From: Podarcis pityusensis
Taxonomy: Eukaryota
DNA length: 64,000 nt
Assembly: GCA_964106645.2 (NCBI GenBank)
Contig: OZ067051.1
Direction: 5' to 3' (one strand)
Shown: in pieces, positions 1,932 to 61,907 of the stretch
Numbering within the stretch: the stretch's first letter is position 1
Layout of the letters: every line of letters starts with the position of its first letter
The notes under the pieces: model-generated
What the model saw: only the letters and a program-made list of their open reading frames with translations
Databases searched by the model: none
Told to the model about the DNA's origin: nothing
Position numbers and translations under genes: made by a program

Positions 1932-2520
1932 CCGTATTTTTTGCTCTATAAGACGCACCAGACCACAAGACGCGCCTAGTTTTTGGAGGAGGACAACAAG
2001 AAAAAAAATATTCTGAATCCCAGAAGCCAGAACAGCAAGAGGGATCGCTGTGCAGTGATCCCTCTTGCTGTTCTGGCTTCTGGGATAGCCGCGCGAAGCC
2101 TCTTCAGGGCAGCGGGATGAACCCTAACCCTAATCCTAACCCTAACTGTGCAGTGGTCCCTCTTGCTGTTCTGGCTTCTGGGAAAAGCCCCCAAGAGCTG
2201 TGCTCCCCTTAAAGAGCGCGCGGAGCATGTGTGCAGCTCTTGGGGGCTTTTCCCTGGGGAGGGAGAAGGGCAGCCCATCAGTCCCTTATTCCACCTTGCG
2301 GAAAAGCCCCCAAGAGCCGCACAGACGCTAGGCGCGGCTCTTTAAAGAGCATGCGGCCCTTGCTGGCTTTTGCAGGAGCTGGGGGAAGGGACAGAGGGCA
2401 GCCCGTCAGTCCCTTCCACCACCTCCCGGAAAAGCCCCCAAGAGCCGTGCGGAGCGTGTGTGCGGCTCTTGGGGGCTTTCCCCCGAGGAAAAGGTGCGTC
2501 TTATGGAGCGAAAAATACGG
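1932..2520. mobile_element. Tc2/pogo-type MITE with internal palindromes and telomere-like repeats
   Basis: TA at both ends (1930-31, 2521-22). TIRs CCGTATTTTTTGCTCTATAAGACGCACC / GGTGCGTCTTATGGAGCGAAAAATACGG. 70-bp palindrome at 2017-2086. Repeated AAAGCCCCCAAGAGC / GCTCTTGGGGGCTTT units. Confidence 0.9.
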
Positions 2521-4245
2521 TACTAGTGAAATGCATTGGCAACAGTGGGTAACAGTTGTGATCATGATGGTTTCAGCTATTTATTATGTAGCCATCTTGA
2601 AGTGTAATGGCTTTGTTTAATGGCAAAATTATGGGTCCAACTGTTGAAGCTTGTAGGTTTAAGTTCTAACTCAGAGCAATGTTGAAACTTGGCTTGATAA
2701 TAGGAAAGCTATGAAGACATAAGCAAGATGTGGCTTATTTGTCAATGCTGTAGATTGCCTTTTATGATGGGGGGGTAGATTTCTTTCAGTAGATGGGGAT
2801 TAGTTTGCAAGTGTTCTGTGGGGCCTTCAGAATGGTGTTAATGGCTTGTTTTGCCTGCCTGTAGTTTTGTTTACCTTGATGTGTATTCCTAAAGTGTTTT
2901 TACCTTTTAAAGCCCTTAAACATTTGGTTGGGAGTACTTAATACAAAAGACCCTTCTCCAGGTACCCCAACACCTGAGATTAAGCTGATATTGACAGGCT
3001 AGAGACAGAGACCCTTCTATAGTAGTGCCCAAACTGAGTCCAAATTCCTCCCATAACCACAAAACTTATTGGGCTTAATTCAAGTCCCTGTGGCATCTCC
3101 TATATTCATAATGTTTGGACTACCCACCAGTGGATGTAGTTTACCAAACTTATTTTCACTTCATGTTTCAGGTGGTGATGGGTAATGAACTGTCCTTTGC
3201 TTACAACCTTCCCCCACCCCCCAATGAAATGGAAATATGGCTGAACAATGTTAGTACTGGTCTTGCTACCCCCCTGCCCACACCATGCTTTCATTGCATT
3301 GGCTTTAGCTACCAGAATGATAGGTGAATTTAATGCTGTCATTCTTCTTTTGGCTGTATCTAAAATGAACATTTAACTTACTTAGCATGGCTGGCAGGGG
3401 GTCTGAGCTGCTTTGGCATTCTTAGGTGGGAAAGGCTTCTGCTTAAGAAGTTTCTTGCTGTTCTAAGTGCAACATGCACTGGCTTGACACAGATAGTTTT
3501 GAATGAAATTATGTTCTCCTCTGTTTCTTCCCATGTAATTCTCTGTCTTTCATTGCCCTGATCTTTTATTGTTGAGCAGCCACTTGCAATAAGTAGGGTA
3601 ATTGTTATTAATTCTCAGGTGGTTATATAAAGACTAGCTCTCATACCGATTGTGCAGAACACAACAGAGGAGAGGCTTATATATAAATATGCAGTGCTTT
3701 AAAAAAACAGGATGGAAATATGCTCGTAAATGTGAAGCTTTGATTCTAGCTTCTCTGTAAGTTTTGTCCAGAAGCCTAGGAAGGTGCAGTTTTCTAAGCT
3801 AAGTTTATAGTGAAGTTTCTTTAAAGCTGCAGATAAGTTTTAGAACTTCCAAATTAGGGCCAGGTTTTTGGGTATTTAGCTGCAGCTAATAAAAGTTCAT
3901 TCTCAGACATTTGAGAAGCCTGGATAGATGGACAGACTCTTTCATCTGGCACGTATTTCCAAATCCATGCTACTTTATTACAGGCCAGCTGTCTCTCATC
4001 TTCCTTCCAGGAATGTTGCAGCCTCTCCACCATTCTTACCTTGTGTGTTGCTAGCAACTTGATGCCTTCCTTAGACCTTTGGACGTTGCTACCATACATC
4101 GCCTCATATGAACTTCAGCCCACAATTTATACAAAAAACACTTTAGAGAGCCATGCAACTAACCTCCTATGCAAGGAGTTGATTTTTTTATTTTTTTTAA
4201 CAGTGAAAGCCCAATAGGAAATTGTGCTGCATTAGAAGTCATGTC

Positions 4246-4621
4246 GCGGGACGCTGGTGGCGCTGTGATCTAAACCATTGAGCCACTTGAGCTTGCTGAT
4301 CAGTAGGTCAGCGGTTTAAATCCCCGCGACGGGGTGAGCTCCCGTTGCTTGGTCCCAACTCCTGTCGACCTAGCAGTTCGAAAGCACACCAAAAAGTACA
4401 AGTAGATAAATAGGTACCGCTCTGTTGGGAAGGTAAACAGTGTTTCCTTGCGCTGCTCTGGTTTTGGTGTTCCGTTGCGCCAGAAGCGGCTTAGTCATGC
4501 TGGCCACATGACCCAGAAAAACTGTGGACAAACACCGGCTCCCTCGGCCTGTAAAGCGAGATGAGTGCTGCAACCCCAGAGTCGTCTGCGACTGGACTTA
4601 ACTGTCAGGGGTCCTTTACCT
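4246..4621 (+). mobile_element. Sauria SINE (Squam1), full length
   Basis: Head GGGACGCTGGTGGCGCTGTG, body AGTAGATAAATAGGTACCGC, tail GGGGTCCTTTACCTTT. 14-bp TSD TTAGAAGTCATGTC at 4232-4245 and 4622-4635. Confidence 0.93.
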
Positions 4622-4779
4622 TTAGAAGTCATGTCAGAGATATTCTATTGACTGTTAGTTCCCAAACAGCATGGTGACTGGAAAAGGTTAACTGAAAAAT
4701 TTACATATAAATCTAGGCTTTAGAAAAATATAGTTAAGCTGCACTCATTTTATTGCACTTGATTTCCATTTATGTCTTA

Positions 4780-5098
4780 TATTGGGGATTGGCAGCCTTT
4801 TGCCCTACAAATGATGCTGGACTACAACTTCTGTTATCTCAAATGATTGGCTCAACTGGTTGGGGCTGATGGAACCATTTTATTTATTAAATTTCTATCC
4901 AAGTTTTCTTGCAGCAAATAGCAGAATAGCAGAATACCATTTAAAAATAAAGAAAAACATCAAAAAACTTATAGAAACATTTTAAAAGCATTCAAATACC
5001 CTAATAATTTCAAAGATGCTAGGAAATTTGACAGATCTTTCAGCTATCCTATGCCTTGGTAAATAACATCTGGAGGATCACAGGTTCCCTACTCCTGT
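4780..5098. mobile_element. Degraded hAT-type MITE interrupted by a LINE 3' tail
   Basis: GATGCTGGACTACAACT...GGGGCTGATGG left half and AACATCTGGAGGATCACAGGTTCCC right half flank an A-rich insert starting TTTATTTATT. Confidence 0.5.
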
Positions 5099-5291
5099 CT
5101 AATGTAAGCCGTCACAGACCCACAAAACAACTTCCATTCTGTTATATGTCTTTGGAAAGATCAGTTGGCTATGTCAGTTGAGGAGAATAATAACTTATAG
5201 TTGCACATTTTCTGGTTCAGAAGTGTTATGGGGTTCTGCTTATGGCATCTTTTATTTTTGGATCAACACATCCCTATAATTTGTATGTATT

Positions 5292-5331
5292 TGTGTGTGT
5301 GTGTGTGTGCGCGCGCACACACACACACACA
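5292..5331. repeat. Compound microsatellite (TG)9(CG)3(CA)8, self-complementary
   Basis: Read directly from the sequence. Confidence 0.95.
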
Positions 5332-6613
5332 TTTCTGTTTTTTACCAGTGTTTATACTTGGATACGAATGAAATCCTGTGTGCGCTGTGGCATTGAATCA
5401 ACTGTGTGTAAAATTTCTCCAGCAAAAATGTTCTACTAACTTGCTATAAAGGATTCATTGTCAGAAGTTTCATTAGGAAAAAGTCTTGATTTTAGCTGTG
5501 TGTGGCAAAAAACTCAAATTGTCGAAAGTTGCAGAACAGCTCTCTGCTGCTCTGAAACGTAAATGACTAATGTGCATATTTTATTTCAGCATCTGGGCCT
5601 GAAAAGTTGCATACCAAATTTTGTTTGATTTGATCAACAATGGCTGAAAATTGGGATTTATCATGGAAATGCTGACAGATATGAACATGTGTCAACTAAA
5701 GCGTGTGCCTGACAAACCTTCTTATTGTATGGTGCTGGTGGTGAAATGTTAATTTTTTGCTGCTTTAATTGCATTTTTTCTTTGCTCAATCTAGTCTTTT
5801 CAAAGTCTGGCTGTTTTGGTTGCACTTCAGCTTTGTACTAATTTTTCCTCGAGTATGCAGAAAACTTGTCAGGTGCCTGTGCTGCTTTTTGAGCAGAAGA
5901 GTTTCCTGAAAGCCCTGGATTACCTTTCTTAGTATACAAGGATGAAAAAAGCAGCAGCTGCACTAGCAAGTCCATATTTTGCTGCAGTAATGTGTTCCTG
6001 ACAGAAGATGGTGCCTTCAGCCTTCACTCAGATTCTTCCTAGTCGTCTTCCGCCACTCTTTTTATTTTATTTAAAAAAAACATTTTGTGCTGCACAGCCA
6101 GAATGCTGTCACTAGGATTATAAATTCCGAAGCCAATTAGATAAAAAAATGTTGCAACTGAAAGCGAAGAAGCTAAAAGCTGGTGAATATCTTCATGTTA
6201 GTGTGCCAGCCTTGGAGAGCAGTTTCTAGGGAGCGCTCAGATGTGAGCTTTCTACACTGCTTTCAACACTGCTTTCTACACTTTTGCACAACATAGATCT
6301 GAAGCATCTGCCGAATTAACTGTGTGAGGGAACTTGGAGTAAGGCGTGATGATTTAAGGGTTTTATTAGATTCCATAGGACAGTAGCTTGCACAACTAAT
6401 TTAATTAATTAATTTAGAGAACGTTCATAGACCACTTAATCAGAAAAGTAAGCAGTGTAAATAATATGGCTACCGATAAAATGCAGATAAAATCAGCAAA
6501 ACTGTAAAAACAGCAACAGTATATATAAATAGTATACATAAATAATTTTCAATAAAACACAATCTGCAAAACTTGTTAAAACAAATATATATCTAAATTA
6601 TATGTCTGAGTAT

Positions 6614-28449: not shown

Positions 28450-30474
28450 TTAGTCGTTTAGTCGTGTCTGACTCTTCGTGACCCCATGGACCAGAGCACG
28501 CCAGGCACTCCTGTCTTCCACTGCCTCCTGCAGTTTAGTCAAACTCATGCTGGTAGCTTCGAGAACACCGTCCAACCATCTCGTCCTCTGTCGTCCCCTT
28601 CTCCTTGTGCCCTCAGTCTTTCCCAACATCAGGGTCTTTTCCAGGGAGTCTTCTCTTCTCATGAGGTGGCCAAAGTATTGGAGCCTCAGCTTCACGATCT
28701 GTCCTTCCAGTGAGCACTCAGGGCTGATTTCCTTCAGAATGGATACGTTTGATCTTCTTGCAGTCCATGGGACTCTCAAGAGTCTCCTCCAGCACCATAA
28801 TTCAAAAGCATCAATTCTTCGGCGATCAGCCTTCTTTATGGTCCAGCTCTCACTTCCATACATCACTTCTGGGAAAACCATGGCTTTTACTACACGGACC
28901 TTTGTTGGCAAGGTGATGTCTCTGCTTTTTAAGATGCTGTCTAGGTTTGCCATCGCCTTTCTCCCAAGGAGCAGGCGTCTTTTAATTTCGTGACTGCTGT
29001 CACCATCTGCAGTGATCATGGAGCCCAAGAAAGTAAAATCTCTCACTGCCTCCATTTCTTCCCCTTCCATTTGCCAGGAGGTGATGGGCCCAGTGGCCAT
29101 GATCTTCGTTTTTTTGATGTTGAGCTTCAGACCATATTTTGTGCTCTCCTCTTTCACCCTCATTAAAAAGTTCTTTAATTCCTCCTCACTTTCTGCCATC
29201 AAGGTTGTGTCATCTGCATATCTGAGGTTGTTGATATTTCTTCCGGCGATCTTAATTCCGGCTTGGGATTCATCCAGCCCAGCCTTTCTCATGATGAATT
29301 CTGCATATAAGTTAAATAAGCAGGGAGACAATATACAGCCTTGCTGTACTCCTTTCCCAATTTTGAACCAATCAGTTGTTCCATATCCAGTTCTAACTGT
29401 AGCTTCTTGTCCCACATAGAGATTTCTCAAGAGACAGATGAGGTGATCAGGCACTCCTATTTCTTTAAGAACTTGCCATAGTTTGCTGTGGTCAACACAG
29501 TCAAAGGCTTTGGCATAGTCAATGAAGCAGAAGTAGGTGTCTTTCTGGAACTCTCTAGCTTTCTCCATAATCCAGCGCATGTTTGCAATTTGGTCTCTGG
29601 TTCCTCTGCCCCTTCGAAATCCAGCTTGCACTTCTGGGAGTTCTCGGTCCACATACTGCTTAAGCCTGCCTTGTAGAATTTTAAGCATAACCTTGCTAGT
29701 GTGTGAAATGAGTGCAATTGTGCGGTAGTTGGAGCATTCTTTGGCACTGCCCTTCTTTGGGATTGGGATGTAGACTGATCTTCTCCAATCCTCTGGCCAC
29801 TGCTGAGTTTTCCAAATTTGCTGGCATATTGAGTGTAGCACCTTAACAGCATCATCTTTTAAAATTTTAAATAGTTCAGCTGGAATATCATCACGTCCAC
29901 TGGCCTTGTTATTAGCAGTGTTTTCTAAGGCCCATTTGACTTCACTCTCCAGGATGTCTGGCTCAAGGTCAGCAATCACACTACCTGGGGTGTACGAGAC
30001 ATCCATTTCTTTCTGGTATAGTTCCTCTGTGTATTCTTGCCACCTCTTCTTGATGTCTTCTGCTTCTGTTAGGTCCTTTCCACTTTTGTCTTTTATTATG
30101 GCAATCTTTGTACGAAATGTTCCTTTCATATCTCCAATTTTCTTGAACAGATCTCTGGTTTTTCCCATTCTATTGTTTTTCTCTATTTCTTTGCATTGCT
30201 CGTTTAAGAAGGCCTTCTTGTCTCTCCTTGCTATTTTTTGGAAATCTGCATTCAATTTCCTGTATCTTTCACTATCTCCCTCGCATTTTGCTTGCCTTCT
30301 CTCCCCCGCTATTTGTAAGGCCTCGTTGGACAGCCACTTTGCTTTCTTGCATTTCCTTTTAATTGGGATGGTTTTAGTTGCTGCCTCCTGTATAATGTTG
30401 CGAGCCTCCATCCATAGTTCTTCAGGCACTCTGTCCACCAAATCTAAATCCTTAAACCTGTTCCTCACTTCCAC
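28450..30474 (-). CDS. BovB reverse-transcriptase portion, 674-aa open frame
   Basis: Motifs NYRTIALISH, FIDYAKAFDCV, GVQQGCILSP, LRYADD, FTFLGS. Confidence 0.93.
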   Translation of the reverse strand: MEVRNRFKDLDLVDRVPEELWMEARNIIQEAATKTIPIKRKCKKAKWLSNEALQIAGERRQAKCEGDSERYRKLNADFQKIARRDKKAFLNEQCKEIEKNNRMGKTRDLFKKIGDMKGTFRTKIAIIKDKSGKDLTEAEDIKKRWQEYTEELYQKEMDVSYTPGSVIADLEPDILESEVKWALENTANNKASGRDDIPAELFKILKDDAVKVLHSICQQIWKTQQWPEDWRRSVYIPIPKKGSAKECSNYRTIALISHTSKVMLKILQGRLKQYVDRELPEVQAGFRRGRGTRDQIANMRWIMEKAREFQKDTYFCFIDYAKAFDCVDHSKLWQVLKEIGVPDHLICLLRNLYVGQEATVRTGYGTTDWFKIGKGVQQGCILSPCLFNLYAEFIMRKAGLDESQAGIKIAGRNINNLRYADDTTLMAESEEELKNFLMRVKEESTKYGLKLNIKKTKIMATGPITSWQMEGEEMEAVRDFTFLGSMITADGDSSHEIKRRLLLGRKAMANLDSILKSRDITLPTKVRVVKAMVFPEVMYGSESWTIKKADRRRIDAFELWCWRRLLRVPWTARRSNVSILKEISPECSLEGQIVKLRLQYFGHLMRREDSLEKTLMLGKTEGTRRRGRQRTRWLDGVLEATSMSLTKLQEAVEDRSAWRALVHGVTKSQTRLND

Positions 30475-30677
30475 TGCATATTCATAAGGAATTTGACTTA
30501 GATTGTATCTTACCGGCCCAGTGGATTTTCCTACTTTCTTCAGTTTAAGCTTGAATTTTGCTATAAGAAGCTAATGATCTGAGCCACAGTCAGCTCCAGG
30601 TCTTGTATAGAGCTTCTCCATCTTTGGCTGCAGAGAATATAATCAATCTGATTTCGATGCTGCTCATCTGGTGATGT

Positions 30678-31394
30678 CTATGTGTAGAGTCGTCTCTTGT
30701 GTTGTTGGAAAAGAGTGTTTGTGATGACCAGCTTGTTCTCTTGGCAGAACTCTCTTAGCCTTTGCCCTGCTTCGTTCTGAACTCCAAGGCCAAACTTGCC
30801 AGTTGTTCCTTTTATCTCTTGACTCCAATCCCCTATAATGAGAAGAACATCCTTCTTTGGTGTCATTTCTATAAGGTGTTGTAAGTCTTCATAGAATTGG
30901 TCAATTTCAGTTTCTTCAGCACCAGTGGTTGGTGCATAAACTTGGATTACTGTGATGTTAAAAGGTCTGCCTTGGATTCGTATCGAGATCATTCTATCAT
31001 TTTTGAGATTGCATCCCAGTACAGCTTTTGCCACTCTTTTGTTGACTATGAGGGCCACTCCATTTCTTTTACGGGATTCTTGCCCACAGTAGTAGATATG
31101 ATGGTCATCTGAACTGAATTTGCCCATTCCCGTCCATTTTAGTTCACTGATGCCCAGGATGTCAATATTTATTCTTGCCACCTCAGTTTTGACCACATCC
31201 AACTTACCAAGGTTCATGGTTCTTACATTCCAGGTTCCTATGCAATATTTTTCTTTACAGCATTGGACTTTCCTTTCGCTTCCAGGCATATCCGCAACTG
31301 AGCATCCTTTCGGCTTTGGCTCTGAATCTACTTGTACTTGTCCTCCGCTCTTCCTCAGTAGCATGTTGGATGCCTTCCGACCTGAGGGGCTCAT
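30678..31394 (-). pseudogene. BovB APE endonuclease portion, separated from RT by a stop and small deletions
   Basis: IGTWNVRT, DILGISELKW, QVYAPT, and IIGDW with the following NAKVG deleted. Stop follows RRLYT. Confidence 0.9.
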
Positions 31395-44637: not shown

Positions 44638-46335
44638 TATTGGTTTTGAGATGGGAGGAGGAGAACAGGGAGATGCTGCATTGTATCAATCCTTACTGAT
44701 ACTCAGGGTGGAGCTGTTGAAATTAATAGATGTGACTGACAAAGGTTAATTGATTTCAGTGGGTCTACTCTGAACAAAACTTTGCTGGATATGACTGGTT
44801 TCAGCACTGGCATATTTGTCACTGAGGTTTTGAAAACACTTGTATTTAATTGAGAGGCAAAATGCATTTATTGATAGTAGCTCTTGCAAAGGAGAACTTC
44901 CAACCCATGGAGCTTTCTTTGTTGTGAACTTGCTGTTTTTGTTTTGGCCGCAAAACAACTGGTGACATGTGGGTATTTAAAATGTATTTTCTTTTCTTGT
45001 TTACACTCTGTCCTATTTACCTATTAAGTGGTGATTGTGTGTTGTTGCAAAGGCAGTCAAGTGTAAATTTCATTTTTTGCTTCATCTAATGCTACTGTTA
45101 GAGGTGGATTTACACATCTGCAAGTATTTGTTGACTTGACACAGGAGCGTGAGGATCGATAGGTAGAGTTGAAATATGTGGTGTTGTTTTGTAACGATAG
45201 GAATGTGGTCTTGATGTTCCCTGTTGATTACAGAACCATTTCAATTTCTACTGCTTACCCTTGTGCCCTCTGGTAACACTTGCCATAATTCCAATTTTGT
45301 GTTTATACTTTGAAAGATTTTTTTTACTCCAAAGGAGAGCCAGATTTAGGTGGGTTATTGGTAATGGCAGTAACAGGATTATTTTTCCTGAAGTATTTGT
45401 TTGCCTTGCGGATTCTGAAGATTCAAAAGATGTTGTTGAATATAAAACTAAACTTTAATCTAGACAATTTGCACAGACTTTGATAATGGAGTGAATAAAC
45501 AATGTAAGACACTATCATAATGTTCATAAACAAAACACTGGACATATTCAGACATCATGCTAAATCACAGTTAGCATAACAAGAACTTAATTATAGGTTA
45601 TATCCAATGTTAGTCCTTCTCAGAGGAGACTCATTAAAATCAATAGACATGGCTGTCTTAGGCCCAGTTATTTCGTGGGTCTATTAGTTAGATACAACTC
45701 TATTTTTTTTTAAAAAAATAATATTTATGACTTTTATAGATTACAAAGAGAGAGAAAAAAGCAAACAAGAAAAAGAAGAAGAAAAAAACAAAAGAGAAAA
45801 ACAAAAAGAGAAAAACAATACAATACAATACAATATATAAACAGTACAAAACACAACCTAAATTCAAAACTAAACACATTAAACTAAACTAAACAAACCC
45901 CACTCCCTAACCTTAACCCTGAATAGAACAAAACAAAAAACAATTTAAAAACATACATCGTCTCTTTTCCATACTCTATCTTTCATTCCCTTGTTTCCTC
46001 GACCTCCTCACACCTCCCTTTTTGTGTTCCACTTCTATTAATTGTTTCAGCAAATCCTTTCCATCTTTCTCCATTTTCTGTGATATTGTAAATAGCGTAT
46101 TTTTTAACCTTATTTTCCATTAAGACTAAAATACTTATATGTGCTTAACTCCTTATAACATTTCTGTTAAGCCCATAAAAAAAACATTAAAAAAAAACAT
46201 TCCACCATTTTTCTATCACTCATTAGTTTTACCATAAGTCTATATATAAACTTTAAATTTTCCAATCTTCTTCCACCCTCTCCTCTCCCAGGTTTCGGAT
46301 TCTGCCAGTCCTTTCCGTCAATTCCATAAAGTCCA

Positions 46336-47007
46336 TCAACCTGGTGATCTTATGTCCGAGGCTCTTAACTCTTTTCCAAGTCCCTTCTGCAGGTCTTCTT
46401 CATTCTCTTTAATGCTAAAGAGCAAATCTCGGGGAAACTCCAGCCTGTCAATCCTTTTCTTCCTTCTGAACAGATCAGCTAAATTTCCATAGTTAAAGCT
46501 ACAGTCCATAAAGTATTTCCGAGTATATTTCAAAATTCCTCCAATTCCAAAGGCCCCCAAAACTTCAATCTCCTCCAGGCCCGAGTCCATGTCCCAAAGG
46601 TCAGTTAATTCCTGCACAGAGGGCTCTTTCCAACTTTCCTTCTTTAATCCAAGCCGGGATCCATTCCTCGGAGTCTGACATTTCCTAGATTCAATCATAG
46701 AAGGCATCAACTTACAGTCCTCAATTTGCTTCTGTAAAACCACAGGTCTCACTTGTGTTATTTTATGTTCAGCAACAGCAGCATTCTCCTTCTCCTCCTT
46801 CTCCTCCACCATTTGTCCTGCCAAAATGGGTTCCTGTACCAAGTCCTGAATTATTTCTGTGTTGGTGTTCGCTTTTTGACTCAAGTTGGTCACTTTCTGT
46901 TCCAAATTATCAACTTTGAAAGTCATGTCATCCATCTTCTTGTGAAGCTGTCCCAGCGAACAGCTTATCTTGCATAAAACAGTCACAATGGCCTCTCCTG
47001 TCAACAT
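46336..47007 (-). CDS. L1 ORF1-like coiled-coil protein, 223 aa from the first ATG
   Basis: Heptad pattern LGQLHKKMDDMTFKVDNLEQKVTNLSQKANTNTEIIQDL in the ORF1 position of the element. The RRM region is diverged, so homology is inferred. Confidence 0.6.
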   Translation of the reverse strand: MLTGEAIVTVLCKISCSLGQLHKKMDDMTFKVDNLEQKVTNLSQKANTNTEIIQDLVQEPILAGQMVEEKEEKENAAVAEHKITQVRPVVLQKQIEDCKLMPSMIESRKCQTPRNGSRLGLKKESWKEPSVQELTDLWDMDSGLEEIEVLGAFGIGGILKYTRKYFMDCSFNYGNLADLFRRKKRIDRLEFPRDLLFSIKENEEDLQKGLGKELRASDIRSPG

Positions 47008-47859
47008 TTTTAAATAGTCCAAGGTCACTCTCTGGTTCTCAGAATCCTTATCAGCAACTGGAAATCCCCCAGTTATACTCCTGTAACAGTTTTAAAAGCT
47101 CCCTCTAGAGGGAAACAGTCTCCACTTGTATCAGTTCTTTCAAGCGCAATTCAAGCATTAAATATAAATTTTCAGTTACTTTTCCTCTTTTTTAAGCGCA
47201 GAAAAGGACAATGGAAACAGTATCTTACTCTTATTTAGCTAGCTGTCAAATCCGTTCTGTCAAAAGCACTCTCTCCAAACGTCCTCTGGCAGCCCGTTCC
47301 CAGGTTCAGAGCAGTGGTAATTTGATTTTTTCACTCTCTCCTGCAGGCTCACTAGATCCAAAATTTCCCCCTCTTCTCCTGCTTCCAAGGGGGTTTTTGT
47401 ATTTTAAACCGGTGGAAATTTGATCCTTTGCCAAAAGCTTTCAAAGGCTTTAACTTGTAACGTCTTTGCTTCAGTCTATTTACAAAAACGGGAGGCGGAC
47501 TTCCTGTTTATAACCTTCCTGTTTCAGTGCCGAATTAAAGTATTTAAGAATCCACTTTTCCGTTTTACTCACGAGTAGTTGTTTAAAGTCCAATTGTCCA
47601 CAGGAAAAAGTCAGCGCTCTCCGGCAACAGCAATGCAGCTTCACTCCGTGAAAGAAGCAGTTGATTCAAAGCACTGCGCCACTCACCCCACGTCGCTCCG
47701 GATCCCCAAAACAGGGTTTCCCCGCGAGTAGGGGAGGTGCAAAGGTGCCAGCTGAATCCCACGTCCACAGGCTTCTCCCGCCTGTGGTTTTTAATGGGTC
47801 TCCGCCTCGCTGTGGCGGTTCAGACCCTGTTTTCCACGGAGCGGATTCCTCCCAATCGG

Positions 47860-47898
47860 AGGAAATCCGCCATTGCCAGAGGCGCCAACCCGGAAGTC
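47860..47898 (-). promoter_or_regulatory. Putative internal L1 promoter motifs (ETS-like ACTTCCGG, YY1-like ATGGCGG)
   Basis: Both motifs lie in the first ~35 nt of the element, where L1 5' ends typically carry them. Confidence 0.5.
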
Positions 47899-48267
47899 TA
47901 GTTAGATACAACTCTAGTTGATCCTAGGTTTGTGTGCTTCTCACCCCTTCCAACGCAGACGTGAGAGGTTCTGAAGCTTTTACTCCTTTAACTTACGCAT
48001 GTAGCATGTTGTATTGTTGAAACTGACAAATTTCGGTTAATGTTACCTGTGGTTTTCAAACAACATGCTGGAGGGCCCCAACGTGGTGCTTTACAGATAT
48101 TTTGGACTCCAGCTCTCATCTGCCAATGTGGTCAGTGGTGAAGTATAATGGGGTTTATAGTTCAAAATGTCTAGACAGCACCAGATCATGCTACCCAAAC
48201 CTGGGCAATAAAAAGGGCTAACCGAATTATGCACAATATAAAATGCTTATGGCATTAGTGCTAAGAC

Positions 48268-48837: not shown

Positions 48838-50784
48838 AATCAATCAATCAATCAATCAATAGATTTTATTGCATTAGCCGTGTGGCCATAGCATGATATA
48901 CATTGAAATAACAACATGAAATGGGGGTGGGGAGGTAAAGGTAGATATCTTCCTGGGCGAATACTTAAAGAAAGAGGGGGGGAAAGGGGGGGTTACTAAA
49001 GCGACAGGGGATTTAAAACATTGAGCGACAGATAGTACAGAAACAAACAAACAAAAAAAACTGCTGAAGCTGGAGGAGGACCGTTAAAGGGTCCTTCAGC
49101 TCCTCAGATTTATCCTAACTCCATTGTCCTTGTACAATAAGACTACTTGGAACTTCGTTCGATTGTGCGGCATATCGACTGCAGCTGTGGTGTTAAGGAA
49201 GAAGTTAGTGCCGCTTTCCTCTTCATCACACTAAGCAGGAAGTTAGCTGTCATCTCGGTAATCCAACAATCAGAATCCTGCAAAAGGAGGGACACTATCC
49301 AAGGCTGGATTGGGAGATGAAGCTTATTCACGAGGGGAGTTAAAAACCGAGATCTTTCATCTGTCCAGTTAGGACAGAAGAGCATTACATGTTCCATAGT
49401 CTCCAGGGCCGTGTTGTTACAGGTGCATGTTCTATTTGCGATGGGAACTCTGGAATAACGACCCGACAGAACTGCCGTAGGAAAACAGTTGAGACGGGCA
49501 CAGGTAAAGGCCCTTCGCTTAGCCTCCGAAGAAATTGTGAAGCAGTATAGAGGGATCCCTTCAGGGGGTGGAATAGCTAGGGCTAGGCCTGAACACGGCC
49601 CTCTTGCATAGGAAGCTGTGTTAGAGAAGTCAAGTTGCTGTAGTTTCTTTTTAATTGGAGGTAGGGCCGCCGGGCTGATACACTCTAAGTTAAGAACAGT
49701 TTTACAATTCAAATTGAGAAGAGAGCGGAATTTGAGGTTAATTGTAGTTTTCCAAGGGGAATTATGAATATCTCTTAGGATCAGATTGGAAAAACCACCT
49801 CTAATTCGAGCATCCGATGCTAATAGGTGGAAGCTGTAGGAAATGGCTCGACTCCATGCTCGTTTAACAATTGAGGGCTGGGCGAACTCGAGTCGTAGGG
49901 CTGCACCTGAGACACATCTCGGGACGCCGGAAAGAGATCTCAGAAACATATGAAGTGGGCGGTCCAAGTTACCTGATATTGCTGTAGTCCATACTTCGCA
50001 TCCATATAATAATTTAGGGACAACTTTGGCATTAAATATTTGAATTGCTGCTGGAAGGTGTTTGCCGCCCTTCTGGTGGTAAAATCGGACAATGGCGTTA
50101 GAGGTCATGGTTGCAGCGAGAAAGGCAGATTGTAGATGGGTGGTCCAGGAGAGATTATAAGTGAAAATTAAGCCTAGATATTTAAAGGCTTTTACCCTTT
50201 CTAAGTAGCCACCTGTGATCTTAAGCGGCTCCAACTTGAGTTTGCAGGAACGAGTGAAGTGGAGGACTTTCGATTTTTTATAATTAATATTAAGAGCTTC
50301 CGCCTTACAATAGGCGATAAATGCATTAACTGCATTTGCTAGGTCCGCAGCTGTTCTGGATAAGATGACGGCATCATCAGCATAGAAAAGGGAAGCAACG
50401 GGGTGGCCTGCTAAGTGAGGAGGGTACTTAGATGCTAGCTTCAAAGTGGAAATTGCATCATGAAGATAGAGATTAAACAGTAGAGGGGCCAAGAGACAAC
50501 CTTGTCGGACGCCCTTGGCCGTTGGAAATGGAGTAGTGAGGGAGCCGTTGGGACCACTTCGGACGCGAGCTGTGGTGTTTGAATAAAGGGAAATAATTAG
50601 GGAGAGGAGGTGCGGATCAATTCCCAGATGGGCAAGTTTGGACCATAATCTCTGCCTAGGAATGGAATCAAAGGCGGCCTCCAGGTCCATGAAAGCGGCA
50701 AATAGGTGGCCTTGCCTTGGTGCAGTGTATTTACTGGCAAGGTGATAGAGAGTTAGACAGTGGTCCATGGTTGATGCTGACTAA
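48838..50784 (-). mobile_element. 5'-truncated RTE-X-type LINE, family A, young
   Basis: RT ORF, 3' end ATGCTATGGCCACACGGCTAATGCAATAAA plus (ATTG)n tail. TSD AGTGATC at 48831-48837 and 50785-50791. Confidence 0.85.
49143..50768 (-). CDS. Non-LTR retrotransposon RT (partial) with C-terminal CCHC-like domain, 541-aa uninterrupted frame
   Basis: FMDLEAAFDSI, GVRQGCLLAPLLFNLY, LFYADD, FKYLG, RTCTC...ETMEHVMLFCP. Confidence 0.92.
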   Translation of the reverse strand: MDHCLTLYHLASKYTAPRQGHLFAAFMDLEAAFDSIPRQRLWSKLAHLGIDPHLLSLIISLYSNTTARVRSGPNGSLTTPFPTAKGVRQGCLLAPLLFNLYLHDAISTLKLASKYPPHLAGHPVASLFYADDAVILSRTAADLANAVNAFIAYCKAEALNINYKKSKVLHFTRSCKLKLEPLKITGGYLERVKAFKYLGLIFTYNLSWTTHLQSAFLAATMTSNAIVRFYHQKGGKHLPAAIQIFNAKVVPKLLYGCEVWTTAISGNLDRPLHMFLRSLSGVPRCVSGAALRLEFAQPSIVKRAWSRAISYSFHLLASDARIRGGFSNLILRDIHNSPWKTTINLKFRSLLNLNCKTVLNLECISPAALPPIKKKLQQLDFSNTASYARGPCSGLALAIPPPEGIPLYCFTISSEAKRRAFTCARLNCFPTAVLSGRYSRVPIANRTCTCNNTALETMEHVMLFCPNWTDERSRFLTPLVNKLHLPIQPWIVSLLLQDSDCWITEMTANFLLSVMKRKAALTSSLTPQLQSICRTIERSSK

Positions 50785-61459: not shown

Positions 61460-61907
61460 TTATGGACCACAGGTATAAAATTCACGGCATGTAATGTCCT
61501 AAGAGAAAATTTAATGAAAATGATTTATAGGTGGTACATGACACCAGTCAAGCTTGCAAAAATTTATCATTTGCCCGACAATAAATGTTGGAAATGTAAT
61601 GAGACTGAAGGTACATTCTTTCACCTTTGGTGGACATGCCCAAGGATTAAGACATTCTGGGAGATGATCTATAATGAAATGAAAAAGGTATTTAAATATA
61701 CCTTTCTGAAGAAACCAGAGGCCTTTCTCCTGGGCATGGTTGGCCAATTGGTGTCAAAGAAGGATAGAACTTTTTTTATTTATGCAACAACAGCAGCAAG
61801 AATACTCATCGCAATGTATTGGAAGACACAAGATTTACCCGCTCGGGAAGAATGGCAGATGAAGTTGATGGACTATATGGAATTGGCGGAAATGACTGGC
61901 AGAATCC
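61460..61907 (+). pseudogene. L1 ORF2 C-terminal (cysteine-rich) fragment, truncated at both ends
   Basis: RENLMKMIYRWYMTP...CWKCNETEGTFFHLWWTC...PEAFLLG...AAR...W, with no stop inside the fragment. Confidence 0.9.

What the first reader, a model, noticed from the sequence alone, without database searches (positions are those of the whole stretch)
45703..47898. Complete 'half-L1' (ORF1-only) retrotransposon in a lizard, with a likely partner L1 in the same window
Seen: a 2196-bp element with an 18-bp TSD, an L1-type 5' end, a ~0.9-kb 5' UTR and one 223-aa coiled-coil ORF. The ORF's stop codon (46336-46338) lies inside a fragment of the ORF2 end in another frame, followed by 3' UTR and A tail. 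All of EN and RT is absent. 46297-46340 matches the L1 ORF2 fragment at 61864-61907 at 41 of 44 nt. Established: ORF1-only HAL1 elements are known from mammals. Inference: this is an independently evolved squamate equivalent mobilised in trans. Its diverged ORF1p might help it hijack, or dominantly inhibit, L1 RNPs through coiled-coil co-assembly. Retention of the ORF2 end and 3' UTR hints at a required cis signal. This is the best candidate for an undescribed system here.
Basis: partly seen in the sequence, partly recalled or inferred. Interest (0 to 1): 0.8.

Follow-up and report, generated by a model that had tools for sequence, protein, structure and literature searches.

The report
Lizard half-L1 with a cut-down ORF1
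This is one recent insertion of an abundant wall-lizard "half-L1": a 2.2-kb jumping element that keeps the start, the tail and a shortened first gene of an L1 retrotransposon but has no copying enzyme, so it probably borrows that enzyme from complete L1 elements.

Summary
A 2196-bp insert lies on the minus strand at 45703-47898, flanked by a perfect 18-bp target-site duplication. It has a 9-A tail, an 891-nt 5'UTR and one 223-aa ORF. The ORF's stop codon sits inside a 44-nt stretch that matches an L1 ORF2 end.

The whole element is L1-derived. Its first 333 nt match the exact 5' end of a full-length Podarcis L1. From nt 1559 onward it matches the ORF2 tail and 3'UTR.

The ORF is a pruned ORF1p (hhalign probability 99.5%, E 5.8e-23). 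It keeps the coiled coil but lacks the N-terminal ~51 residues, ~42 residues of the RRM core and ~17 residues of the CTD.

The same deletions and the same ORF1/ORF2 junction occur in subfamilies only 28-45% identical in protein. Thousands of contigs from three lizard species lie on the element, and one species has the empty site. So this is a family, not a local deletion.

The "partner L1" in the window is only a 447-bp dead fragment. Selection on the protein is suggested but not shown. Trans-mobilisation and co-assembly with L1 ORF1p are untested.

The scan has already met this family elsewhere in this genome. It is a new variant of a known kind (HAL1-like).

The parts
45685..45702 (.). Target-site duplication, copy next to the A tail
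   Evidence: 18/18 identical to 47899-47916
45703..45711 (-). A tail (9 A on the element strand)
   Evidence: Read directly
45712..45921 (-). Low-complexity, pyrimidine-rich distal 3'UTR (element nt 1978-2187)
   Evidence: GC 20-36%. Matches the half-L1 contig L008 at 73-77% but not the L1 references.
45922..46203 (-). 3'UTR homologous to the L1 3'UTR. Includes a strongly conserved G-rich block at about element nt 1861-1920.
   Evidence: blastn to L003 9695-10105 (75%) and L004 13020-13158 (75%). The block is 80-91% identical across elements. It has very high contig depth at 45964-46057.
46204..46340 (-). Remnant of the last ~44 codons of L1 ORF2, non-coding here. The ORF2 frame is broken by a 2-nt gap and differs from the ORF's frame.
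   Evidence: Aligns to L004 12721-12864 (78%), to L003 from 9695, and to window 61864-61907 (41/44)
46336..47007 (-). ORF of 223 codons plus TGA: a pruned L1 ORF1p
   Evidence: phmmer hits to L1 ORF1 proteins at E 5e-12 to 8e-11. hhalign probability 99.5%, E 5.8e-23.
46756..46998 (-). Coiled-coil part of the ORF (residues 4-84)
   Evidence: AF2 helix 4-84, pLDDT 80-97 over residues 1-70. Parallel in-register homotrimer model scored 0.80 against a best control of 0.24.
46516..46539 (-). Site of the ~42-residue deletion of the RRM core (between residues 157 and 164, depending on the alignment)
   Evidence: BLASTP and MAFFT alignments to P0006 and P0011
46405..46410 (-). Site of the ~17-residue deletion in the ORF1p C-terminal domain (between residues 200 and 201)
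47008..47898 (-). 5'UTR, 891 nt. The first 333 nt are the L1 5' end, CpG-rich.
   Evidence: Element nt 1-333 match L004 7029-7361 (72%) and L002 81-387 (69%). Nt 364-879 match the 5'UTR of the L003 element (71-73%).
47899..47916 (.). Target-site duplication, copy next to the 5' end
61460..61906 (+). Separate 447-bp fragment of the L1 ORF2 3' end. It is not part of the element and is not a functional partner.
   Evidence: 90% identical to nt 5289-5734 of the L004 L1. Nothing else of an L1 is in the window.

Best explanation
The insert is a full-length copy of a non-autonomous, internally deleted L1 family of lacertid lizards that works like mammalian HAL1.

Origin (shown by homology): an ancestral L1 lost everything from the C-terminal tail of ORF1 to the last ~44 codons of ORF2. 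Its ORF1 also lost its first ~51 codons, about 42 codons of the RRM core and about 17 codons of the CTD.

Transcription (inferred): the element is probably transcribed from the retained CpG-rich L1 5' end and polyadenylated.

Mobilisation (inferred): it is copied into new sites by target-primed reverse transcription, using ORF2p supplied in trans by autonomous L1s. The perfect 18-bp TSD, the A tail and the full-length 5' end fit this.

The protein (in silico only): it keeps a trimer-forming coiled coil and a basic, probably unfolded C-terminal remnant.

Role of the protein (inferred, about even odds): master copies have kept the frame open because the protein helps the element's own RNA reach or hold ORF2p.
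For: 1. Insertion anatomy: perfect TSD, A tail, single ORF, no EN or RT.

2. L1 origin of all parts:
- Element nt 1 aligns with the first base of a 6.2-kb Podarcis lilfordi L1. In that L1, ORF1 (P0003) is followed by Exo_endo_phos and RVT_1 ORFs.
- Nt 1559-1977 align with the ORF2 tail and 3'UTR of two references.

3. ORF1 homology:
- phmmer E values of 5e-12 to 8e-11 to ORF1 proteins.
- hhalign probability 99.5% over 202 columns.
- P0006's best PDB hit is human LINE-1 ORF1p, 2ykp, E 0.0046.

4. A family, not a local event:
- L001 is collinear across the junction and has the same stop position.
- All subfamily ORFs share both internal deletions and the ...RSPG end.
- 2317 to 5478 contig pieces per run from three species lie on the element, while the flanks stay at single-copy depth. 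Several contigs span 46258-46421.

5. Insertion polymorphism between species: a contig of organism E joins 45700 to 47929, which is the empty site.

6. Coiled coil: AF2 helix and trimer model scored 0.80 against 0.24.
Against: - Trans-mobilisation is not shown, and no autonomous L1 is in the window.
- Selection on the protein is weak at best. Nei-Gojobori dN/dS between subfamilies is 0.4-0.6, but synonymous sites are saturated and differences are nearly equal at the three codon positions.
- Of the 10 best-supported differences from the family majority inside the ORF, 4 are synonymous and 6 are not, which is not significant.
- Residues 85-223 have no confident fold.
- Some relatives have truncated ORFs (P0002, P0009) or a further deletion (L008-L011), so the ORF may be dispensable.
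- The target site does not look like the classical TT/AAAA.
- No run on record as RNA holds the element.
Confidence: 0.8

Rival explanations
1. The family is real, but its ORF is a dispensable relic. The RNA is mobilised only because it carries the L1 promoter and the L1 3' end, as a long non-coding L1 parasite. The intact frame in this copy reflects its youth.
For: - Codon-position differences between subfamilies are nearly uniform.
- The C-terminal half is not predicted to fold.
- Relatives have truncated ORFs (P0002, P0009) or a 277-nt further deletion (L008-L011).
- The most conserved and most abundant blocks are non-coding or at the junction: element nt 1-60, 1441-1680 and 1861-1920.
- A scan note describes protein-less 1.1-kb L1-type retroposons in this genome (unchecked).
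Against: - Frames of 201-223 codons are open in subfamilies whose ORFs differ at about 40% of nucleotide positions. They share the same end and the same two deletions.
- A frame that master copies did not need would carry shared stops.
- There is an ascertainment caveat: the protein library only holds frames that were open.
Confidence: 0.3
2. The pruned ORF1p acts on the partner L1. Through its coiled coil it forms mixed trimers with L1 ORF1p, either to enter L1 particles (hijacking) or to poison them (dominant inhibition).
For: - The coiled coil is the best-kept and best-predicted part. It is 48% identical over residues 1-128 to the ORF1-type N-terminal part of P0005, a P. raffonei ORF1/ORF2 fusion gene model.
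- The RNA-binding domains are gutted.
Against: - No test of mixed trimers was made.
- The coiled coil has diverged strongly between subfamilies (28-45% identity), which fits escape from co-assembly as well as it fits co-assembly.
- A self-trimer model says nothing about partners.
Confidence: 0.15
3. An ordinary L1 copy suffered a deletion after it inserted at this locus.
For: None beyond the L1 homology of the ends.
Against: - The same junction and stop occur in L001, L005 and L007-L011 from other sequencing runs.
- Contigs from three species bridge the junction.
- The TSD flanks the 2.2-kb form.
Confidence: 0.01
4. The insert is a processed retrocopy of a host mRNA, or a domesticated ORF1-derived host gene.
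For: A TSD plus A tail also mark retrocopies. The 5' end is CpG-rich, like a housekeeping promoter.
Against: - Nearly the whole length is homologous to L1 elements.
- It is present in thousands of contig pieces.
- The 5' end coincides with the L1 5' end.
Confidence: 0.01

Closest known systems
HAL1 (half-L1) elements of mammals. PMC5753468 cites Smit 1999 and Bao & Jurka 2010 and describes them as non-autonomous derivatives of L1 that encode only ORF1p and originated independently several times in mammals.
   Same: - L1 5' end, an ORF1-type gene and an L1 3' end.
- No ORF2.
- A multi-copy family with TSDs and A tails.
- Must use ORF2p in trans.
   Different: - The host is a lacertid lizard, and the origin is from lizard L1s, so it is not a member of any mammalian HAL1 lineage.
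- The ORF1p is pruned: no N-terminal region, no RRM core and a shortened CTD. From my own knowledge of HAL1, which I could not check because Bao & Jurka 2010 is not held, HAL1 ORF1p is described as a full ORF1p.
- About 44 codons of the ORF2 end are retained as non-coding sequence.
L1 ORF1p of the coiled-coil/RRM/CTD type (human structure 2ykp; Podarcis proteins P0003 and P0006)
   Same: Collinear homology over 202 columns, with a parallel trimer-type coiled coil at the N-terminal end.
   Different: It lacks about 42 residues of the RRM and about 17 of the CTD. The C-terminal half is not predicted to fold.
HeT-A of Drosophila telomeres (from my own knowledge, not checked here)
   Same: A non-LTR element that encodes only a Gag/ORF1-type protein and relies on the reverse transcriptase of another element.
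   Different: Unrelated lineage, telomere-specific, with a complete Gag that has a host-beneficial role.
Other internally deleted L1 derivatives of Podarcis seen here: the P0005 fusion in L003 and the shorter form in L008-L011
   Same: The same 5'UTR lineage, the same ORF2 tail and the same 3'UTR.
   Different: - P0005 joins the ORF1 coiled coil in frame to the C-terminal region of ORF2.
- L008-L011 lack element nt 1181-1457.

Membership tests
HAL1-type (half-L1) non-autonomous L1 derivative | 5' end, coding part and 3' end all derived from L1 | tested here: met
   blastn to full-length L1 in L004 and to L002 and L003; hhalign to ORF1p
HAL1-type (half-L1) non-autonomous L1 derivative | Encodes an ORF1-type protein and no ORF2 (no EN, no RT) | tested here: met
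   There is a single ORF. The six-frame reading shows nothing else. Only about 44 codons of the ORF2 end remain, out of frame.
HAL1-type (half-L1) non-autonomous L1 derivative | A family of retrotransposed copies that share the same deletion junction | tested here: met
   L001, L005 and L007-L011 share the junction. Thousands of contig pieces come from three species, one of which has the empty site. TSD confirmed.
HAL1-type (half-L1) non-autonomous L1 derivative | Mobilised in trans by L1 ORF2p | not testable with these tools
   Inferred from the TSD, the A tail and the L1 3' end
Mammalian HAL1 lineages (descent) | Descent from a mammalian L1 lineage | tested here: not met
   The nearest relatives of the ORF and the UTRs are Podarcis L1 sequences
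Canonical L1 ORF1p (coiled coil + RRM + CTD) | Trimeric coiled coil | tested here: met
   In silico only: AF2 helix 4-84 and homotrimer score 0.80 against a best control of 0.24. In the tool's calibration the mark was reached by 21 of 30 proteins solved as pairs and 0 of 23 solved as single chains. pLDDT is at least 65 and the runs share at least 57% of contacts.
Canonical L1 ORF1p (coiled coil + RRM + CTD) | Complete RRM domain | tested here: not met
   A gap of about 42 residues relative to P0006, P0003 and P0011, shared by all subfamilies. pLDDT is below 50.
Canonical L1 ORF1p (coiled coil + RRM + CTD) | Complete C-terminal domain | tested here: not met
   A gap of about 17 residues relative to P0006 and P0011
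Processed pseudogene / retrogene | Sequence derived from a single-copy host mRNA | tested here: not met
   L1 homology throughout, and high-copy

The most novel reading that the evidence does not exclude
The lacertid half-L1 lineage has kept, through long diversification, a minimal ORF1p that is little more than a trimerising coiled coil with a basic tail. If selection maintains this protein, ORF1p can serve retrotransposition, or antagonise the partner L1 through mixed trimers, without its RRM and an intact CTD. That would separate the coiled-coil function of ORF1p from RNA binding in a natural system.
Probability: 0.2. Interest if true: 0.8.

Novelty: new variant of a known kind. Interest (0 to 1): 0.5.

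Why it matters
HAL1 elements are a mammalian textbook case. An independent, abundant and recently active equivalent in wall lizards shows that losing ORF2 while keeping ORF1 is a recurrent route for L1 parasites.

The unusual point is that the retained protein has lost the RRM core and part of the CTD, yet its frame is open in deeply diverged subfamilies. That gives a natural experiment on what ORF1p is needed for: trimer formation as against RNA binding, and cis preference.

It also matters for annotation of lacertid genomes. These 2.2-kb elements and their roughly 200-aa ORFs escape Pfam and can be mistaken for orphan genes.

Tried and rejected
- Pfam on the ORF gave only a sub-threshold HSBP1 coiled-coil hit. 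Pfam also failed on genuine Podarcis ORF1 proteins even at E 10, so its silence says nothing.
- The word-based protein search gave 0 hits.
- phmmer and profile searches of the ORF and its family against PDB sequences found nothing useful. The ORF1p profile A4 hit only coiled coils.
- The ESM Atlas feature search gave unnamed arthropod clusters at 0.90-0.91, which is not informative.
- A single-sequence AF2 model was poor, pLDDT 44. With a 10-row alignment only the helix became confident. I therefore ran no fold search, because the C-terminal half is unreliable.
- Consensus RNA folding of the ORF2 tail and of the conserved 3'UTR block gave -5.5 and -0.35 kcal/mol with no convincing covariation. 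A structured cis signal is not supported by these few sequences.
- The exact-protein look-up of the ORF is not on record.
- Within-subfamily dN/dS could not be computed, because no close copies could be fetched. The only proxy is the 4 synonymous to 6 non-synonymous differences from the read-laying table.
- Contigs of organisms A and B reach across the element ends by only 18-29 letters. That is under the tool's 31-letter rule, so I do not count them as proof of a filled site.
- Run X20 is only guessed to be RNA, so I make no claim of expression.
- Bao & Jurka 2010 could not be read.
Full report
**1. The observation**

The region was read directly. On the minus strand, 45703-47898 is a 2196-bp insert. 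The 18-mer TAGTTAGATACAACTCTA stands at 45685-45702 and again at 47899-47916 without a mismatch.

The element ends in 9 A (45703-45711). Before that comes a pyrimidine-rich, low-complexity stretch. The first 200 nt are 60% GC with 14 CpG, and GC falls to 20-36% at the 3' end.

The only long frame is 47007-46336: 223 codons from ATG, or 230 from an upstream GTG. The 5'UTR is 891 nt. No frame carries endonuclease or reverse-transcriptase sequence.

The 44-nt match to 61864-61907 is real. It is 41/44 in inverted orientation, with E 1.6e-12 within the window. The ORF's TGA lies inside that match, in a different frame from ORF2.

**2. The rest of the window**

The window's L1 piece is 61460-61906, 447 bp. 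It is 90% identical to nt 5289-5734 of a 6.2-kb L1 reference. Beyond the element itself, nothing else of an L1 is present in the window. It is a dead fragment cut on both sides, not a partner.

The window also holds two other kinds of LINE. An EN ORF and an RT ORF lie at 28450-31394, and an RT ORF lies at 49143-50768.

**3. Is the ORF an ORF1?**

Several searches were silent:
- Pfam.
- The word search.
- PDB sequences.

The exhaustive HMMER search of 1.84 billion representatives gave 11 hits. They fall into two groups.

Group (a) is short proteins of 87-212 aa (P0001, P0002, P0007, P0008, P0009), 28-45% identical to the ORF. P0001 matches end to end (E 3.7e-25) and ends in the same ...RSPG.

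Group (b) is longer proteins (P0003, P0005, P0006, P0011). They match the N-terminal 128-170 residues at E 5e-12 to 8e-11. P0011 matches only the C-terminal 65 residues (E 8.6e-5).

Group (b) is L1 ORF1p, on three grounds:
- P0003 lies directly upstream of ORFs with Exo_endo_phos and RVT_1 in a Podarcis lilfordi contig (L004, GCA_947686815.1; species from PMC12860763).
- P0006's best PDB hits are human LINE-1 ORF1p (2ykp, E 0.0046) and mouse ORF1p (2ldy), collinear over about 190 residues.
- Pfam does not recognise even these genuine lizard ORF1 proteins, so its silence on the ORF carries no weight.

A profile-profile comparison of the short family (A3) with the ORF1p set (A4) gives probability 99.5% and E 5.8e-23 over 202 columns.

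**4. What is missing from the ORF**

Pairwise and multiple alignments show four losses relative to ORF1p:
- The first ~51 residues. The ORF starts at the equivalent of an internal Met of P0005. At the DNA level, element nt 879-891 correspond to L003 7985-8153.
- About 42 residues in the middle of the RRM.
- About 17 residues of the CTD.
- The tail beyond RSP(D/G).

From my own knowledge of the human ORF1p structure, the 42-residue gap removes the central strands and the second helix of the RRM. I did not map this residue by residue.

AF2 with a 10-row alignment gives a confident helix for residues 4-84 (pLDDT 80-97 over residues 1-70). Residues 85-223 have pLDDT below 50.

A homotrimer model of residues 1-120 scored 0.80 against a best control of 0.24. 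Contacts are in register at heptad positions 4-60. The partner's pLDDT is at least 65, and the runs share at least 57% of their contacts. In the tool's calibration the mark was reached by 21 of 30 proteins solved as pairs and by 0 of 23 solved as single chains. The tool warns that a three-copy job is unlike that calibration and that a pass may come from memory of solved relatives.

So the model supports a parallel trimeric coiled coil but does not prove it.

**5. The ends of the element are L1**

- Element nt 1-333 align to L004 7029-7361 (72%), starting at the first base of both. They also align to L002 81-387 (69%), upstream of the complete ORF1 P0006.
- Nt 364-879 align to the 5'UTR of an L1 derivative in Podarcis raffonei (L003, GCA_027172205.1).
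- Nt 1559/1560-1977 align to the ORF2 tail and 3'UTR of L003 (75%) and L004 (75-78%).

The five-way alignment shows the breakpoint. Upstream of GTTGATGGACT the element agrees with the half-L1 contig L001. Downstream it agrees with the L1 references. The ORF1 frame meets the ORF2 tail out of frame and stops at once. The ORF2 frame is further broken by a 2-nt gap.

**6. A family or a local deletion?**

It is a family, on three lines of evidence.

First, other contigs share the junction. L001 (P0001) is collinear with element nt 1163-1657 across the junction and has its stop at the same position. L005 and L007-L011 share the junction too. All short proteins share both internal deletions, so the pruning predates the split of the subfamilies.

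Second, contigs from other species lie on the element. Laying Logan contigs of four runs at 85% likeness or better placed 4122, 2317 and 5478 pieces on the element for runs X1, X4 and X10 (three differently labelled organisms). In X1, 603 of the pieces are 99% alike or better. The flanks stayed at single-copy depth. Contigs span 46258-46403, 46291-46416, 46239-46377 and 46291-46421, each across the junction. Depth summed over contigs is not a copy number, so I use it only to say "many".

Third, one species lacks the insertion. A contig of organism E joins 45700 to 47929, with 58 letters on the shorter side. That is an empty site, so the insertion is younger than the split from that species.

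The blocks with the highest depth (element nt 1-340, 1465-1650 and 1840-1935) are also the best conserved between diverged elements. They are shared with L1s and with other derivatives.

**7. Constraint on the protein**

This part is weak. Nei-Gojobori dN/dS between subfamilies is 0.4-0.6. However, synonymous sites are saturated and differences are almost equal at the three codon positions.

Of the ten best-supported differences between this copy and the family majority inside the ORF, four are synonymous and six are not. That gives a ratio of about 0.4, which is not significant.

The better argument is that frames of 201-223 codons, with the same end and the same two deletions, stay open in subfamilies that differ at about 40% of ORF positions. 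The protein library holds only open frames, which biases this argument.

Truncated relatives (P0002, P0009) and a form with a further 277-nt deletion (L008-L011) show that the ORF can be lost.

**8. A cis signal in the tail?**

The ORF end plus ORF2 tail (81-88% identical) and a 3'UTR block (88-91%) are the most conserved parts. RNAalifold found no structure with covariation in either. Conservation is shown. A structured signal is not.

**9. Literature**

The held library describes HAL1 as a non-autonomous L1 derivative that encodes only ORF1p and that arose several times in mammals (PMC5753468). Searches combining HAL1 or half-L1 with lizard, squamate and related terms found no description of such elements in squamates. 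Bao & Jurka 2010 is not held, and Repbase and Dfam could not be consulted.

**10. Earlier notes of this scan**

Searches list many 1.8-2.2-kb "half-L1" copies on other pieces of this genome. One follow-up reads "pruned ORF1", which my independent tests on this copy confirm. Another reads "protein that matches nothing known". My profile comparison, which includes 201-212-aa ORFs of that kind, speaks against that reading. So the scan has found this family before on other DNA.

**11. Verdict**

This is a real, recent, full-length copy of a lacertid HAL1-like family with a cut-down ORF1p. It is a new variant of a known kind. The "partner in the window" is wrong. The functional ideas remain untested.

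Noticed in passing
window 28450-31394 (minus): Two adjacent long ORFs of another LINE. One is 238 aa with Exo_endo_phos and one is 674 aa with RVT_1. By eye it looks like an RTE/BovB-type element that is nearly complete.
   Followed up: partly
window 49143-50768 (minus): A 541-aa ORF with the RVT_1 domain and a Cys/His-rich C-terminal end. It belongs to a third kind of LINE in the window.
   Followed up: partly
L003 8001-10105 (Podarcis raffonei CM049768.1): Gene model P0005 joins the ORF1 coiled coil in frame to the C-terminal region of ORF2. The same ORF2 tail and 3'UTR follow. This is another internally deleted L1 derivative, annotated as a gene.
   Followed up: partly
L008-L011 (Logan contigs): A shorter derivative that lacks element nt 1181-1457 but keeps the 5'UTR, the coiled-coil part, the junction and the 3'UTR. 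The same 123-aa product is on record on five contigs, four of them shown, from four different runs.
   Followed up: partly
window about 45998-46020 (minus); alignment A7 columns 46-65: A G-rich tract in the 3'UTR is nearly identical in four elements that are otherwise about 75% alike. It recalls the conserved G-rich polypurine tract of mammalian L1 3'UTRs (my own knowledge). No function was tested.
   Followed up: no
L004 5765-7072: The full-length Podarcis lilfordi L1 used as reference starts inside the end of a long C2H2 zinc-finger ORF of 435 aa.
   Followed up: no
P0011 (838-aa gene model): A chimeric gene model. It begins with an ORF2-tail-like stretch that runs straight into the middle of ORF1 (RRM and CTD), and then continues into ORF2-like sequence.
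   Followed up: no
window 47917-47928 against the organism E contig: At the empty site, organism E has 18 other letters where this genome has about 14 next to the TSD. The target region itself has diverged by small indels.
   Followed up: no
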